A DNA stretch of 63,764 nt, counting the filler, from Octopus bimaculoides (lineage: Eukaryota), in NCBI RefSeq assembly GCF_001194135.2. It is 13 parts of 13 records of this genome, joined end to end, with 100 filler letters (N's around TTAATTAATTAA, not from the genome) between each part and the next. Parts side by side here need not be neighbours in the genome. Positions count along the whole stretch, not along the records: positions 4,674 to 8,110 come from NC_068983.1; 12 more parts are not named here. One strand, 5' to 3'. Both the position numbers and the translations under genes were made by a program. Positions within the stretch are counted from its first letter, which is position 1, and each line of letters opens with the position of its first letter. Below the pieces are notes generated by a model that searched no databases, had not been told where the DNA came from, and was given only the letters and a program-made list of their open reading frames with translations. Below are positions 4,630-8,210 of this stretch, one piece after another.

Positions 4630-4758
4630 NNNNNNNNNNNNNNNNNNNNNNNNNNNNNNNNNNNNNNNNNNNNAAAGATGAACCAATAAAAAAAAAGAAA
4701 ATTACTAAACGGAGCATGACGTGAAAAATGGCAGAATATGGGGAAATATCAATAAAAT

Positions 4759-4777
4759 TTTATTTATTTATTTATTT
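4759..4777 (-). promoter_or_regulatory. Possible polyadenylation signal cluster (AATAAA repeats on minus strand) for the beta-lactamase-like gene
   Basis: TTTATT tandem on + strand about 620 bp downstream of the stop; such motifs are common by chance in AT-rich DNA. Confidence 0.25.
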
Positions 4778-4989
4778 CAAATTGCAATGTATTGATCTTA
4801 TATGATGTATTGATTTTGTAAAGAATACATCGATTTCAAACAAATTTTGATGATGGAAAATATGAAGACGTTTATCAAAGCCAGACGTTAAGTAGTTTGT
4901 GCAAAGATGTTGTTCATAGTGTGTATCTGTGTGTATAGATGTTTCTGTTTATGTGTGTTAATGAGAGTGCATATGGGTATACCAGTGTG

Positions 4990-5034
<45 letters not shown>

Positions 5035-5384
5035 AAGCGTGCGTACGCGCGCGTTCGTGATTTACTGCGGGTGATTCGCTCAGTCTTGTAACCAGAGTTT
5101 GATGTATCAGTATTTGACTAGATGAGACACGATGAGACACGATCACAGCTACGTCCTACTGAACTGATCTTTACAAAAGGAGGAAAACATTCGATGTAAT
5201 GTTTAAATAATAGCTCAAACCGTAACAATAATCTTCTTCGCTTTTTAATTGCGGAAAATGTTTTATAACCATAAAAAAAAACTGTATTCATTTAGGTAAT
5301 TTAATTTTTAATGACATTCCACCGCGTTTTTTAATAGTTTGTTTTGTTTTCAATTGATAAGTCTGTGATGTTCTGTTGCTTTTT

Positions 5385-7408
5385 TTAGTTCATTTTTTTG
5401 TTTTTTAAAGAAGTTTTTCGCTCAAGATAAACGGCATAATACAAAACGCCCTTCTTATTTACATAACCCACAAGCAGTTTCGGGAAATAGCTCCCTCTAA
5501 AGTAATGATAAGCAATAACTTCACCTACACCTGAAGCAGTAAGGTTATGTTTGAAGAGACCTTGTCTGGTACTGTCTCTGCGATAAATTACCGAAAATCG
5601 AGGTTTTTTATAGCGGCTTGAAGAATCCAGGTATGTCATGACTCGGCCAGATTTGAAATTTAGTTTCATACTAAAGATAAGATCTCGTAAACTGATATTC
5701 ATATACTCTTTAGAAAATTTAATGGGTTTCTTTTCCAGAATAAAGCATACCAATGGTTCGTGGTTTATGTGGAAAAAACTTTGAACCCGCGGAACGTAAC
5801 CCTTCTCGTTATATACATGAGCGAAGAGTTTATAACTTTGAGAATATTGCCGAATTCCGAATTTAATATCCACTGGGGGTTCTTTTTCCTTGTTAAAAAG
5901 TGCCATATATTTTTGCTTGCCTCCGTGTGAATAACTTGTATATGTTTGTATCAATTTCAGGTAGGCATCACTTCTTGCATAGACATGCTTGTAATGTAGA
6001 AGTCTCTTTTCTTCTAAACCATGTTCGAGATAGAAGGCGTCTGGAGTTTGACCAGGATTAAAGTGGGCTATAACACTGAAAAAAGTTTTTTCTTTAAACT
6101 CAAAAGCACTTATCCATTCCACTTTAAAGTCTTGTTCTCGGATGGCACTAACATATGCTGAAATATGTCTCTCTGGTACTTGATACTTAACGATCCGCGA
6201 TCCTTCGGCTGGAGTACCAATTTGAATATCTGACAGATCATAATTGAAATAATCAGGAGTATGAATATCGAAATTCTTTGCAAAATGTAAAATCTCTTTG
6301 TTGAATAAATTTTTGTTCTTTCTTCCAACTAACAGCATCACAAATGCATCAGCTGACGAATGTGTTGAGTTGTGGTGTTTATGGATAGACTTCAACAATC
6401 CTTTATGATAAAAGAGCATATCATCTGTGTTCATATCACTTTCTTGCCAAATATGGCCATGCTTGTTGACATTGACCCCAGCTCCCATCCAACTATCGGC
6501 ATGTCCAACTATACGGCTTGGTTTCTCCAAGAGCATTCTTACTCCGGACTCGTTGAGAAGATGATGGTCGCCAGAATAATCCAAACAACGAGAAAAGCGC
6601 ATTATATCATAAACATTGGAGTGCCATTCAACTCTGGCATGTTCTGGTGGAGCATGTAAGGTATTGGACGGCATATGAAATACAGCACCGTTCTTCTTGT
6701 TTTTCTCATCGTGATGGTGGTTAGCGATGCTAACCTTTGTATGCCACATACCACACGGCTCCAGAATGTGCTTGCGAACAAAATCAGCGTAGCCTAAATC
6801 TTGTACCTTCTCGATAATTCGTTCCAGTATGACGTAACCAAAATTTGAGTATGTCGAGTGTGTACCTGGTCGATCGTGAAGAGGAAGGGAAATGACATAT
6901 CTGATGACATCTCTCAGTTCTATTGGTCGAGATAACTTCATGATGTCAGTTATGTTGGGTACACGGTAGCCTTTAGATAAATATACAGAGTTCAGCAGAG
7001 GATCAAACAGAGGTGGTTTGTTTGCGTTCCAACCAGCAGCATGGCGCAGCAGATCATCAATTGTTATCTCATACAACAGTTTGTCAGTATGATGAGCGCC
7101 CCACGGTTTCAAATGGCCTAAAATCCCTCTTTTACCAAATACTTTACTTGTCAGCCCCAATTTGTTTTCTTCAGCTAATTTCAGAATGGAGACTGCAGTA
7201 AACATCTTGGCAATGCTTGAAATGGGGAACAACGTTTCTGGGATGATTTTGTGTTCTTTATGCAATTTCCCGTAACCTCTGGCATAAATAAGTTTGCCAT
7301 GTCTTGATAAAGCAATCGCTGCCCCTTCGTACTGGTGTTTGCTTAAAAATTTATTGAATGCCTCATCAAATGATTTATTGGTTGGCAGTTGATGATCAAC
7401 ACACACAC
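5385..7408 (-). CDS. Terminal coding exon of a serine beta-lactamase/DD-peptidase-family (class C-like) hydrolase with five C-terminal BTRD1/polyglycine-hydrolase-like repeats; 5' exon(s) not in this ORF
   Basis: Uninterrupted frame of 673 codons to the stop at 5385-5387. SxxK = S-I-A-K (7217-7206), YxN = Y-S-N (6851-6843), family-typical LLRHAAGW and PG..S.YSNFGY.IL..IIE segments. Minus-strand polypyrimidine tract TTTTTTGTTTTCTTTCTCTTCCATAG ends in AG at 7410-7409, giving a phase-1 exon start at 7408. The ORF-track start (TTG, MKCFLFSFSSI) is the translated acceptor tract. Confidence 0.9.
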
Positions 7409-7502
7409 CTATGGAAGAGAAAGAAAACAAAAAACATTTCAATTAATGGAATTTAATTAATGAAATACAAATACAAAGTCATATTTTCATTCATCCTTAT
7501 AA

Positions 7503-7667
7503 GCAATTCATCCGTTTCTATAGTCTGAGTTCAAATTCCGACGAGGTCGACTTTCCCTTTCATCCTTTCAGGGTCGATAAAATAAGAACCGGTTGAGCCC
7601 TGGGGTCGACGTAATCGACTTACTCCCTCTCTCGAAATTACTAGTCTGGTGCCAACATTTGAAACCA
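7503..7667 (+). mobile_element. SINE family A, 5'-truncated
   Basis: CTGAGTTCAAATTCCG..GGTCGACTTTCCCTTTCATCC..GGGGTCGA.GTAATCGACTT. Confidence 0.85.
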
Positions 7668-7737
7668 ATGAGTAAGGTTGTTGCTTTTTTGTTTTGTTTT
7701 GTTTTGTTTTTGTTGGGTTTTTTTTGTTTCTTTTTTT

Positions 7738-7897
7738 GAGAACCCAGGTTCGAAATTCCCTCAGGACACCTGATGAAGGCTGGAGAGTACATCAGCCGAA
7801 ACGTTGTGTTAACAACAAACAAGACGAGGACAAATATCCGTCCAATGTATATAATGTAAACAATATACATAATTCCTCATCTCTCAAATATAGAACT
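7738..7897 (+). mobile_element. Penelope-like element terminal fragment carrying the hammerhead
   Basis: About 160-bp repeat also present at 17777-17920 and partially at 60020-60097; CTGATGAAGG...CCGAAACG is the typical Penelope-like terminus. Confidence 0.7.
7765..7810 (+). ncRNA. Minimal type-I hammerhead ribozyme motif (Penelope-like element type)
   Basis: GACAC(7765-69) CTGATGA(7770-76) A GGCTG-gagagtacat-CAGCC GAAA CG T T GTGTT. Stem I GACAC/GTGTT, stem II GGCTG/CAGCC, core CUGAUGA and GAAA, palindromic stem III ACGU, cleavage triplet GUU (7803-7805). Confidence 0.8.
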
Positions 7898-8210
7898 CAG
7901 TTACCGAATTTCCTCGTGTAAAAGTTGCATTATTTTAGACTTGGTTTTTAACTGAAAAATTTGGAGTGCGAACTATAGTACAACTATGGAAGGAAATGGT
8001 TTTGTACCAAGCTTTTCATGAGTAAATACGTTAAATGATTGGATCGTAAAGATCGCTACTACTAGGATATATCTTTTATATTTTAACGTGTTTCGGTCAT
8101 CTGGCTACGGNNNNNNNNNNNNNNNNNNNNNNNNNNNNNNNNNNNNNNNNNNNNTTAATTAATTAANNNNNNNNNNNNNNNNNNNNNNNNNNNNNNNNNN
8201 NNNNNNNNNN

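What the first reader, a model, noticed from the sequence alone, without database searches (positions are those of the whole stretch)
5385..7408. Bacterial-type beta-lactamase-fold hydrolase fused to five polyglycine-hydrolase-like repeats, encoded as a spliced animal gene
Seen: a 673-codon intact frame in an otherwise decayed repeat landscape, with SxxK and YxN motifs, and five ~50-aa C-terminal repeats (aa ~416-675 of the ORF track) of pattern H(G/N)L....Y......G(Y/F).P..v..y...G...y..iy.k. Established: this pattern characterises BTRD1 (bacterial tandem repeat domain / polyglycine hydrolase-like repeat). Fungal polyglycine hydrolases combine five such repeats with a beta-lactamase-fold domain, with the repeats N-terminal; here the order is reversed. 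The KVFG..GIL..L...D..L.EITIDDLLRHAAGW segment looks like bacterial serine hydrolases rather than mitochondrial LACTB. Inference: a horizontally acquired, domesticated peptidase/amidase, possibly acting on glycine-rich peptides or bacterial cell-wall D-amino-acid peptides in host-microbe defence, mucus or egg coats. This is the best candidate for an undescribed system here.
Basis: partly seen in the sequence, partly recalled or inferred. Interest (0 to 1): 0.88.

Follow-up and report, generated by a model that had tools for sequence, protein, structure and literature searches.

The report
Octopus secreted lactamase-fold hydrolase with repeat barrel
This is the main exon of an octopus gene for a secreted serine hydrolase (penicillin-binding-protein fold) joined to a five-repeat barrel also found in fungal polyglycine hydrolases; it belongs to an old, unstudied family present in many invertebrate phyla, so it is not a recent bacterial import into cephalopods.

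Summary
Window 7408..5385 (minus strand) is one 673-codon exon, preceded by a polypyrimidine tract and an AG acceptor. It encodes a PF00144 lactamase-fold domain with intact S64-x-x-K67, Y186-S-N and H334-K-G motifs, followed by five E-H-E-E repeats (aa 404-664).

The BTRD1 call is right, but only indirectly. Pfam BTRD1 does not hit this protein. It does pass its threshold in six orthologous-family members. A family profile aligns over all five repeats to bacterial BTRD1 arrays (hhalign 98.9%, E=2e-17). The only significant PDB fold match of the modelled domain is the Fusarium polyglycine hydrolase 7tpu.

The gene is not a cephalopod-specific acquisition. The same two-domain architecture and the same gene structure (signal-peptide exon plus one large exon) occur in bivalves, gastropods, a brachiopod, a nemertean, a crinoid, a hemichordate and amphioxus. 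An ancient bacterial origin remains possible but unproven. dN/dS against O. vulgaris is 0.2.

Many family members, including cephalopod paralogues, have lost the catalytic Ser and Tyr; this copy keeps them. Most likely it is a secreted acyl-enzyme peptidase or amidase whose barrel binds substrate. The substrate is unknown. No published description of the animal family was found.

The parts
5385..7408 (-). Terminal coding exon (exon 2) of the gene. It holds 2 bases completing a split Ser codon, 673 codons and a TAA stop, and encodes the whole mature protein.
   Evidence: ORF. Acceptor site and reading frame read. It is colinear with O. vulgaris exon 2 at 95.8% DNA identity with no indels.
7409..7436 (-). 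3' splice site: polypyrimidine tract (ttttttgttttctttctcttccat) followed by the AG acceptor at 7410-7409.
   Evidence: Sequence. The O. vulgaris gene model joins exon 1 to exactly this point. The TTG 'start' at 7442 is intronic.
7437..8110 (-). 3' end of the long first intron (about 29 kb in O. vulgaris). It contains a T/A-rich tract and repeat-like sequence. Exon 1 is not present in this piece.
   Evidence: No signal-peptide exon appears in any frame. Low-complexity arrays at 7678-7737. Window 7712-8110 has no match in the O. vulgaris locus.
6219..7379 (-). Lactamase-fold (PF00144, PBP / DD-peptidase type; MEROPS S12 from general knowledge) catalytic domain, about residues 10-396 of the exon-2 product.
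   Evidence: Pfam E=4.9e-40. Sequence matches to PDB 2qmi, 7tpu, 4gdn and 4y7p. Foldseek E about 1e-14 to 2qmi, 9sn1, 4gdn and LACTB. AlphaFold secondary structure.
7206..7217 (-). Motif I, S64-I-A-K67: the nucleophile serine and the general-base lysine.
   Evidence: Alignment to the family HMM and alignment A1.
6843..6851 (-). Motif II, Y186-S-N188.
   Evidence: Aligned to the equivalent region of 2qmi and 7tpu.
6399..6407 (-). Motif III equivalent, H334-K-G336. H334 is invariant in the 13-sequence alignment A1 (the window protein and its 12 closest full-length relatives); it varies in more distant family members.
   Evidence: H334 listed among the invariant columns of A1. Motif table, including the variant forms in distant members.
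6060..6197 (-). BTRD1-type repeat 1 (E-H-E-E), residues 404-449.
   Evidence: AlphaFold models. hhalign to bacterial BTRD1 arrays.
5892..6035 (-). BTRD1-type repeat 2, residues 458-505.
5730..5867 (-). BTRD1-type repeat 3, residues 514-559.
5577..5714 (-). BTRD1-type repeat 4, residues 565-610.
   Evidence: The Pfam BTRD1 hit in relative P0012 falls on the equivalent unit.
5415..5567 (-). BTRD1-type repeat 5, residues 614-664, followed by a short basic, disordered tail (KTSLKNKKMN) and the stop codon at 5387-5385.
4674..5384 (-). 3' flank, either UTR or intergenic, with a (GT/CA)n microsatellite at 4985-5033. It is conserved with O. vulgaris at about 93-96%.

Best explanation
The region is the second and main coding exon of an octopus nuclear gene. 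The product is a secreted two-domain protein. The signal peptide is encoded by a small exon far upstream, outside the window. The N-terminal roughly 390 residues are a PF00144 serine hydrolase of the penicillin-binding-protein / DD-peptidase / class-C lactamase fold. It keeps the full catalytic set: Ser64 nucleophile, Lys67, Tyr186-x-Asn188 and His334-x-Gly336. It should therefore work by the usual acylation-deacylation cycle on an amide or ester bond. The C-terminal roughly 260 residues are five E-H-E-E repeats forming the alpha/beta barrel known from the N-domain of fungal polyglycine hydrolase (Pfam BTRD1). Here the barrel follows the catalytic domain instead of preceding it. By analogy with polyglycine hydrolase and other lactamase-fold peptidases that carry accessory domains (e.g. 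Lip3), the barrel most likely binds or positions a macromolecular or peptide substrate.

The gene is one member of an ancient animal family. The family is present in molluscs, brachiopods, nemerteans, echinoderms, hemichordates and amphioxus, with the same architecture and the same exon layout. It was therefore inherited vertically at least since the bilaterian ancestor. In many lineages, including a cephalopod paralogue clade, the catalytic Ser and Tyr have been lost, so the family mixes enzymes and probable non-catalytic binding proteins. The window's copy is on the enzyme side.

Shown: exon structure, both domains, motif integrity, purifying selection, family distribution. Inferred: secretion, catalytic competence, the substrate-binding role of the barrel. 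Guessed (about 0.3): the substrate is an extracellular peptide of microbial type (D-amino-acid-containing or peptidoglycan stem peptides) or a glycine-rich linker.
For: Exon and splice site.

Host genome: 96% amino-acid identity and 95.8% DNA identity to an O. vulgaris chromosome, including non-coding flanks.

Catalytic domain: PF00144 at E=4.9e-40. Motifs intact. Fold matches at E about 1e-14.

Repeat barrel: five E-H-E-E units at pLDDT about 90, matching the published description of the PGH N-domain (PMC9912923). The only significant PDB fold match is 7tpu, at E=1.7e-5 and probability 1.00, with the next hit at E=0.2. hhalign against bacterial 5xBTRD1 domains gives 98.9% probability, E=2.2e-17 and 254 columns. 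Pfam BTRD1 exceeds its threshold in relatives.

Selection: dN/dS is 0.205 overall, 0.20 and 0.21 per domain, with no indels.

Distribution. Conserved two-exon layout. The animal lactamase domains cluster in 100/100 bootstraps. N-terminal hydrophobic leaders are present in full-length relatives. Transcript contigs of relatives carry UTRs.
Against: No biochemical or expression data exist for this gene or any family member. The signal peptide is read by eye from the orthologue, not from this window. Pfam BTRD1 does not detect the window protein itself. The Foldseek superposition on 7tpu is mediocre (TMq 0.42, rmsd 19.6). Catalytic residues have been lost frequently elsewhere in the family. This shows that catalysis is dispensable for at least some family functions, so this copy's main role could also be binding. 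Motif III is H-K-G rather than the canonical K/H-T/S-G.
Confidence: 0.75

Rival explanations
1. One reading: a bacterial gene transferred horizontally into the cephalopod lineage and then domesticated.
For: The nearest non-family hits are all bacterial lactamase-only proteins at 30-35% identity. The mature protein is encoded by one intron-free exon.
Against: Full-length two-domain homologues exist in bivalves, gastropods, a brachiopod, a nemertean, a crinoid, a hemichordate and amphioxus. The same layout (signal-peptide exon plus one big exon) is seen in abalone and a crinoid. The animal sequences cluster together. No bacterial protein with the lactamase-then-BTRD1 order was found among the best 150 of 1.84 billion representatives.
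Confidence: 0.03
2. Ancient horizontal transfer. A bacterial lactamase-fold gene (with or without BTRD1 repeats) entered the genome of a pre-bilaterian animal ancestor as an intronless ORF, gained a signal-peptide exon, and has been inherited vertically since. This is compatible with the best explanation and concerns only ultimate origin.
For: A single exon for the entire mature protein is conserved between protostomes and deuterostomes, with the only shared intron at the junction between signal peptide and mature protein. Both building blocks are predominantly bacterial (PMC9912923). No named hit came from fungi, plants, vertebrates or ecdysozoans with this architecture.
Against: The NJ tree resolved no bacterial sister group. 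The animal lactamase domains are no closer to bacterial BTRD1-lactamase proteins (mean distance 1.51) than to lactamase-only proteins (1.45). No bacterial protein with the same domain order was found. Non-bilaterian animals and protists were not specifically sampled. Descent from the early-eukaryote PBP set proposed by Peitsaro et al. (PMC2266909) is an alternative.
Confidence: 0.4
3. The protein is mainly a non-catalytic binding or structural protein (a pseudoenzyme-like receptor, lectin-like or matrix component), and the catalytic motifs are retained incidentally.
For: Across the family, the nucleophile Ser is replaced by N, A, G, D, E or Q. The Tyr is replaced by H, V, P, Q, R, T, L or F. 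This happens in many members that still keep full length and architecture, including cephalopod paralogues P0005-P0009. Other lactamase-domain proteins of molluscs (gigasin-6) are reported as shell-matrix components and settlement cues (PMC5854119 and PMC9456362).
Against: This copy and its orthologues (O. vulgaris, Argonauta, P0004) keep all three motifs (P0003 has G→N in motif III) while the sister paralogue clade lost the Ser and Tyr. dN/dS in the catalytic domain is 0.20. Gigasin-6 did not appear among relatives of a bivalve family member at E<=1e-20.
Confidence: 0.15
4. It is a functional equivalent of fungal polyglycine hydrolase: an endopeptidase that cuts Gly-Gly bonds in glycine-rich linkers of target proteins.
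For: The same two building blocks are present. 7tpu is the second-best PDB sequence match for the catalytic domain (E=6e-16) and the only PDB fold match for the barrel.
Against: The domain order is reversed. The catalytic domain matches the archaeal PBP homologue 2qmi slightly better (E=1.3e-16 vs 6e-16) and D-stereospecific peptidases 4y7p and 9s7k less well. PGH is reported to retain only two of the three lactamase motifs, whereas this protein has all three. The animal family does not cluster with BTRD1-lactamase proteins. No fungal PGH sequence was included in the tree.
Confidence: 0.1
5. It is a true beta-lactamase, a bacterial contaminant, or a decaying pseudogene.
For: There are weak hits to class C beta-lactamase models.
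Against: All NCBIfam class C scores are far below their cut-offs (41.9 against 415 bits). The characterised relatives PGH and Lip3 lack beta-lactamase activity. The flanks are eukaryotic (splice acceptor, microsatellite) and syntenic with an O. vulgaris chromosome. The frame is intact with dN/dS 0.2.
Confidence: 0.02

Closest known systems
Fungal polyglycine hydrolases / chitinase-modifying proteins (Fvan-cmp, PDB 7tpu), and the bacterial BTRD1x5-lactamase 'serine hydrolases' (e.g. Gimesia aquarii WP_197998529, Haliscomenobacter WP_373553872)
   Same: The same two modules are present: a five-repeat E-H-E-E alpha/beta barrel (BTRD1) and a PF00144 serine-hydrolase domain. All are secreted. The barrel is homologous over all five repeats (hhalign 98.9%). 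7tpu is the only PDB fold match for the barrel.
   Different: The domain order is permuted: the catalytic domain comes first here, and the barrel comes first in PGH and the bacterial proteins. The repeats are so diverged that Pfam BTRD1 misses this protein. All three catalytic motifs are kept, whereas PGH is reported to keep two. The host is an animal. The lactamase domains do not cluster with those of the BTRD1-first proteins.
Archaeal and bacterial PF00144 D-stereospecific peptidases and PBP homologues: Pyrococcus abyssi Pab87 (2qmi), Bacillus cereus alkaline D-peptidase (4y7p), dHy1 (9s7k), S. aureus Flp (4gdn), Streptomyces R61 DD-peptidase (3pte)
   Same: These are the best sequence and fold matches for the catalytic domain. 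They have the same SxxK / YxN / H-x-G motif set, and R61 also has His in motif III.
   Different: None carries a BTRD1 barrel. They are prokaryotic. Identity is only about 17-21% in the structural alignments.
Lip3/Lip7 DL-peptidases of Paenibacillus (PDB 9sn1)
   Same: An N-terminal lactamase-fold peptidase is followed by a C-terminal accessory domain that shapes the substrate cavity. Total length is similar (663 aa). They lack beta-lactamase activity.
   Different: The C-terminal domain is an unrelated beta-strand-rich module of about 150 residues. The catalytic tetrad is S-K-K-Y, with Lys rather than His in motif III. These are a functional analogy only.
Metazoan LACTB family (LACTB, LACTB-like 1 and 2, esterase-like; Peitsaro et al. 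2008)
   Same: These are animal genes with a PBP/lactamase-fold domain thought to be of bacterial ancestry.
   Different: LACTB is mitochondrial, forms filaments and has no BTRD1 domain. Sequence similarity is weak and partial (E about 1e-7 over about 50 residues). That study reports the catalytic Ser conserved in all metazoan homologues, unlike this family. Whether the 'esterase-like' echinoderm genes overlap this family was not tested.

Membership tests
Pfam PF00144 Beta-lactamase (PBP / DD-peptidase / class C fold) | HMM match above the curated threshold | tested here: met
   138.1 bits against a cut-off of 27, E=4.9e-40, residues 25-348 of the 685-aa ORF.
Pfam PF00144 Beta-lactamase (PBP / DD-peptidase / class C fold) | Three active-site motifs: SxxK, Y/S-x-N, K/H-T/S-G | tested here: met
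   S64-I-A-K67, Y186-S-N188 and H334-K-G336. The middle residue of motif III is Lys rather than Thr/Ser.
Pfam PF00144 Beta-lactamase (PBP / DD-peptidase / class C fold) | Lactamase/transpeptidase fold | tested here: met
   AlphaFold model with pLDDT 80 and pTM 0.84. Foldseek E=7e-15 to 2qmi, with hundreds of lactamase-fold hits.
Class C beta-lactamase (NCBIfam bla_class_C) | Score above the equivalog cut-off | tested here: not met
   41.9 bits against a cut-off of 415.
Pfam PF17660 BTRD1 (polyglycine hydrolase-like structural repeat) | HMM match above threshold on this protein | tested here: not met
   No hit at E<=1 on the whole protein, and none at E<=10 on the C-terminal half or its thirds.
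Pfam PF17660 BTRD1 (polyglycine hydrolase-like structural repeat) | HMM match above threshold on clear full-length homologues, and profile-level homology of the whole array | tested here: met
   Scores against a cut-off of 23 bits: P0012 32.9, Antedon 34.2, Branchiostoma 34.6, Lineus 35.5, Lingula 28.3, Solemya 25.0, Haliotis 26.2. hhalign of the family C-terminal domain against bacterial 5xBTRD1 domains: 98.9%, E=2.2e-17, 254 columns. A local HMM of the C-terminal domain hits the bacterial N-domains at up to 51 bits.
Pfam PF17660 BTRD1 (polyglycine hydrolase-like structural repeat) | Five tandem E-H-E-E units of about 44 aa plus short loops, forming a barrel (as in 7tpu) | tested here: met
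   Five E-H-E-E units in two independent models, pLDDT about 90, compared with the description in PMC9912923. Barrel closure could not be inspected because no coordinates were available.
Pfam PF17660 BTRD1 (polyglycine hydrolase-like structural repeat) | Structural superposition on the solved N-domain of 7tpu | tested here: inconclusive
   7tpu is the only PDB hit with E<0.001 (E=1.7e-5, probability 1.00), but TMq is 0.42 and rmsd 19.6 over 321 columns.
Polyglycine hydrolase (chitinase-modifying protein) family | Architecture: N-terminal barrel followed by C-terminal catalytic domain | tested here: not met
   The order is reversed in this protein and in all 45 animal family members. It is barrel-first in the bacterial relatives.
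Polyglycine hydrolase (chitinase-modifying protein) family | [quoted passage not shown] | not testable with these tools
   Requires a biochemical assay.
LACTB | Orthology to mitochondrial LACTB (close sequence similarity, mitochondrial presequence, no extra C-terminal domain) | tested here: not met
   Only a local match of about 50 residues at E about 1e-7. The orthologue has a signal-peptide-like leader. A 270-aa C-terminal barrel is present.
Recent horizontally transferred gene (cephalopod-specific) | Restricted to the recipient lineage, absent from sister animal phyla | tested here: not met
   Homologues with the same architecture occur in six animal phyla, and the gene structure is shared.
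Gigasin-6 (oyster shell-matrix lactamase-domain protein) | Detectable close homology to bivalve members of this family | tested here: not met
   No protein named gigasin-6 was among the 46 hits at E<=1e-20 for the Tegillarca member. The gigasin-6 sequence itself could not be retrieved, so distant relatedness through PF00144 is not excluded.

The most novel reading that the evidence does not exclude
The lactamase-BTRD1 proteins are a previously undescribed fifth lineage of animal penicillin-binding-protein-derived genes. The lineage would be ancestral to Bilateria, and secreted. It would have split repeatedly into catalytic and catalytically dead copies. Together these would act as an extracellular system that recognises (dead copies) and degrades (live copies such as this one) bacterial D-amino-acid or peptidoglycan peptides. 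This would be a logic parallel to catalytic and non-catalytic PGRPs.
Probability: 0.15. Interest if true: 0.75.

Novelty: new variant of a known kind. Interest (0 to 1): 0.5.

Why it matters
The barrel of polyglycine hydrolase is a fold with no known function, and it has been reported from all kingdoms. Here it is joined, in the opposite order, to a lactamase-fold hydrolase in a family that runs through at least six animal phyla and has never been studied. The family offers natural experiments: live and dead catalytic sites on the same scaffold, sometimes in the same genome. These could show what the barrel does and what animals use PBP-derived enzymes for outside mitochondria. It also corrects a tempting but wrong story of cephalopod-specific horizontal transfer. 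The layout of one exon for the whole mature protein, conserved between protostomes and deuterostomes, is a clean case for testing very old bacterium-to-animal transfer.

Tried and rejected
1. Pfam BTRD1 on the window protein, on its C-terminal half and on its thirds gave no hit.

2. A profile of the C-terminal domain against PDB sequences gave only noise.

3. The large homology search with the C-terminal alignment returned nothing at all, not even the family itself. I treat that as uninformative, not as a negative result.

4. Single-sequence self-alignment for the repeats was not above shuffled controls.

5. The full-length Foldseek search listed only lactamase-fold entries in its top 50. 7tpu did not appear until the C-terminal domain was modelled and searched alone.

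6. Lip3 (9sn1) looked like a same-architecture match because of its length, but the paper shows that its C-terminal domain is a different module.

7. A link to gigasin-6 was considered and not supported.

8. Sample accessions of the transcript contigs were not found in the literature, so several family members remain unassigned to species.

9. Two members on 0.5–6.4 Mb contigs (4.37 Mb for P0142; 0.5 Mb read, up to 6.4 Mb recorded, for P0129) were checked as possible bacterial chromosomes. They are gene-poor eukaryotic scaffolds.

10. Rfam, tRNA and tandem-repeat scans of the piece found only a microsatellite and low-complexity tracts. A weak mir-297 match is the (GT)n repeat.

11. The NJ tree did not resolve a sister group for the animal clade. 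The exact-split bootstrap was only 14/100, and only the tolerant cluster measure is robust.
Full report
**1. What is in the sequence.**

In the piece 4674-8110, the only long open frame lies on the minus strand, 7442..5385 (685 codons counted from a TTG). Reading the DNA shows a pyrimidine-rich tract and an AG at 7410-7409, immediately before GTGTGTGTTGATCAT. There is no ATG between that point and the catalytic motif.

The best database match is an Octopus vulgaris protein, 96% identical. It begins MDYRNLSFCATLLIALFTSS and then continues VCVDHQL exactly where the window's frame resumes after the AG. In the O. vulgaris chromosome, residues 1-20 lie in a separate exon about 29 kb upstream of the exon that encodes the rest. 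That leader exon is not present in the roughly 700 bp of intron held in this piece.

The real feature is therefore exon 2, at 7408..5385. It comprises two bases completing a split Ser codon, 673 codons and a TAA stop.

The piece is 95.8% identical in DNA to the O. vulgaris locus, including the non-coding flanks. It is octopus nuclear DNA, not contamination.

**2. The catalytic domain.**

Pfam PF00144 matches at E=4.9e-40. NCBIfam gives only far sub-threshold matches to class C lactamases, D-aminopeptidase, PBP4B and AmpH.

By sequence, the best solved relatives are:
- the Pyrococcus abyssi PBP homologue 2qmi (E=1.3e-16);
- the Fusarium polyglycine hydrolase 7tpu (E=6e-16);
- S. aureus Flp, 4gdn;
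- Bacillus alkaline D-peptidase, 4y7p.

LACTB gives only a local match of about 50 residues at E about 1e-7.

The motifs are S64-I-A-K67, Y186-S-N188 and H334-K-G336. An AlphaFold model built from the family alignment (pLDDT 80, pTM 0.84) matches lactamase-fold structures at E about 1e-14.

**3. The C-terminal half.**

Single-sequence self-alignment is also no better than shuffled sequence.

(a) I cut the family alignment into the five proposed units and compared the profiles. Nine of ten pairs align in register, with a best P of 1.4e-4.

(b) Two AlphaFold runs give five consecutive E-H-E-E units at 404-449, 458-505, 514-559, 565-610 and 614-664, with pLDDT about 90. This is the topology published for the N-domain of polyglycine hydrolase: five structural repeats, E-H-E-E, 44 residues plus a loop of 5-6 residues (PMC9912923).

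(c) I searched the isolated domain model against the PDB. It has exactly one significant match, 7tpu (E=1.7e-5, probability 1.00), and the next hit is at E=0.2. The superposition is only moderate, however (TMq 0.42).

(d) Pfam BTRD1 passes its 23-bit threshold in clear full-length homologues: P0012 32.9, crinoid 34.2, amphioxus 34.6, nemertean 35.5, Lingula 28.3, Solemya 25.0 and Haliotis 26.2. A profile of the octopus-family domain also aligns to the five-BTRD1 N-domains of bacterial proteins over 254 columns, at 98.9% probability and E=2.2e-17.

The domain is therefore a strongly diverged five-unit BTRD1 array.

**4. The family and its distribution.**

An exhaustive HMMER search of 1.84 billion representative proteins with the full-length profile found about 45 clusters (at 50% identity) with the same lactamase-then-barrel architecture. 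Every named member is an animal:
- Cephalopods: Octopus, Argonauta.
- Gastropods: Haliotis (four species), Aplysia, Pomacea, Elysia.
- Bivalves: Tegillarca, Solemya, Mizuhopecten, Sinanodonta, Mactra.
- Brachiopod: Lingula.
- Nemertean: Lineus.
- Crinoid: Antedon.
- Hemichordate: Glandiceps.
- Amphioxus: Branchiostoma.

All are annotated only as uncharacterized, hypothetical, 'Beta-lactamase-related domain-containing' or 'protein flp'.

The unnamed members sit on transcript-like contigs with AT-rich UTRs or on gene-poor eukaryotic scaffolds.

Proteins with the opposite, polyglycine-hydrolase-like order are bacterial: Gimesia, a Methyloligellaceae MAG and Haliscomenobacter. They carry four or five strong BTRD1 repeats.

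Bacterial lactamase-fold proteins with long C-terminal tails among the top hits carry TIG or Por-secretion domains, not BTRD1.

In a neighbour-joining analysis of the lactamase domain (243 sequences, 299 columns), all 45 animal sequences fall on one side of a split with two unclassified extras. That cluster recurs with Jaccard >=0.9 in 100 of 100 bootstraps. No sister group is resolved. The animal domains are also no closer to the barrel-first bacterial proteins than to lactamase-only ones.

**5. Gene structure.**

The same layout occurs in both octopus paralogues, in abalone and in the crinoid: a signal-peptide exon of about 20-26 codons, a long intron, and then one exon for the entire mature protein. 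Amphioxus has two extra introns near the 5' end but still ends in a 554-codon exon. The layout therefore predates the protostome-deuterostome split.

It is what one would expect of an originally intronless gene that acquired a leader exon. This keeps an ancient bacterial origin on the table but does not prove it.

**6. Selection and catalytic status.**

Against O. vulgaris there are 29 amino-acid differences, no indels, dS 0.096, dN 0.020 and dN/dS 0.205. The two domains are almost equal, at 0.20 and 0.21.

Across the family, the catalytic residues are far from universally kept. A cephalopod paralogue clade (P0005-P0009, including O. bimaculoides LOC106876528 and an Argonauta gene) has N-I-S-K and H-S-S or H-S-H. 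Tegillarca has A-L-S-K and V-S-N. Amphioxus has S-L-S-E and L-S-D. Lineus has S-M-S-H and F-S-I. Several unnamed members have D, E, G or Q at the nucleophile position.

The window protein and its orthologues keep all three motifs. The ten cephalopod sequences form one clade, and the dead paralogues form a sub-clade within it.

**7. How it most likely works.**

Shown: an expressed-type gene structure, a two-domain protein, an intact catalytic triad or tetrad, and purifying selection.

Inferred: secretion through the leader exon; acyl-enzyme hydrolysis at Ser64 with Lys67 and Tyr186 as bases and His334-x-Gly lining the site; and the barrel acting as a substrate-binding or positioning module. The last point rests on analogy. 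A substrate-positioning role has been suggested for polyglycine hydrolase. In Lip3, a different C-terminal domain demonstrably shapes the substrate cavity.

The substrate is unknown. The nearest characterised catalytic domains act on D-amino-acid-containing peptides, on peptidoglycan-type peptides or on glycine linkers, and none of the close ones is a true beta-lactamase. I therefore favour an extracellular peptidase or amidase acting on microbial-type peptides, at roughly 0.3 probability.

The repeated loss of catalysis in relatives suggests that binding, probably through the cleft plus the barrel, is a conserved part of the family's role.

**8. Comparison with what is known.**

The protein works like a PF00144 peptidase with an accessory domain. 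It is a member of PF00144 and, at profile level, of the BTRD1 repeat superfamily. It is not a polyglycine hydrolase by architecture, not LACTB and not a class C beta-lactamase.

The 2008 survey of metazoan PBP-like genes lists four lineages, reports a conserved catalytic Ser in all of them, describes no repeat domain and includes no molluscs (PMC2266909). Full-text searches for BTRD1, PF17660 and polyglycine hydrolase found no description of an animal family. One paper notes the same barrel fold in a red-alga cuticle protein.

**9. Verdict.**

The family assignment is correct but needed indirect evidence. The evolutionary story is wrong at the level proposed (cephalopod horizontal transfer) and remains open at a much deeper level.

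This is a new, permuted, animal variant of a known module combination. It belongs to an unstudied pan-bilaterian family with an interesting mix of live and dead catalytic sites. Interest is moderate (0.5).

Noticed in passing
Relatives P0005-P0009 (including O. bimaculoides LOC106876528 and an Argonauta hians gene); alignment A1: A cephalopod paralogue clade (52-56% identical) keeps the full two-domain architecture but has Asn in place of the catalytic Ser and His-Ser-Ser/His in place of Tyr-Ser-Asn. These are probably catalytically dead copies sitting beside the live one. Similar losses recur in bivalve, nemertean, amphioxus and unnamed members.
   Followed up: partly
window 4985-5033, with a weak Rfam hit at 4997-5064: A (GT/CA)n microsatellite of about 24 units lies roughly 350 bp downstream of the stop codon. 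The sub-threshold mir-297 match (28.6 bits against 90) is this repeat, not a miRNA. The alignment to O. vulgaris breaks here, consistent with length variation.
   Followed up: yes
window 7530-7740 and 7712-8110 (intron, minus strand): The intron holds a repeat-like segment followed by an A-rich (T-rich on the plus strand) low-complexity tract, reminiscent of a SINE tail. No tRNA or Rfam match was found. The last roughly 400 bp (7712-8110) have no counterpart in the 71-kb O. vulgaris locus, suggesting a lineage-specific insertion or deletion.
   Followed up: partly
L007 (O. vulgaris OX597816.1), L009 (Haliotis), L010 (Antedon), L011 (O. bimaculoides), L008 (Branchiostoma): The gene layout (signal-peptide exon, long intron of 10-63 kb, one roughly 2-kb exon for the whole mature protein) is shared between molluscs and a crinoid. 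Amphioxus has two additional 5' introns.
   Followed up: yes
P0159 (Argonauta hians LOC115210556) and P0160 (Lingula anatina LOC106172838, 784 aa): These are further, more divergent family members. One is a third Argonauta paralogue with a weakly matching barrel (36 bits). The other is a Lingula protein with an extra N-terminal region of about 130 residues of unknown nature.
   Followed up: no
P0012 / L001 (JGI sample 3300009753) and L002 (SRR35106282): The same 694-aa family member (29% identical to the window protein, all motifs intact) appears on mRNA-like contigs in an environmental JGI data set and in an SRA run. The source organism is unidentified, probably a marine invertebrate in a plankton or metatranscriptome sample.
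   Followed up: partly
Tool behaviour: The large homology search with the C-terminal-domain alignment scored 2332 candidates and reported none at E<=0.01, not even the family's own members. This is implausible and is best treated as a failed search.
   Followed up: no
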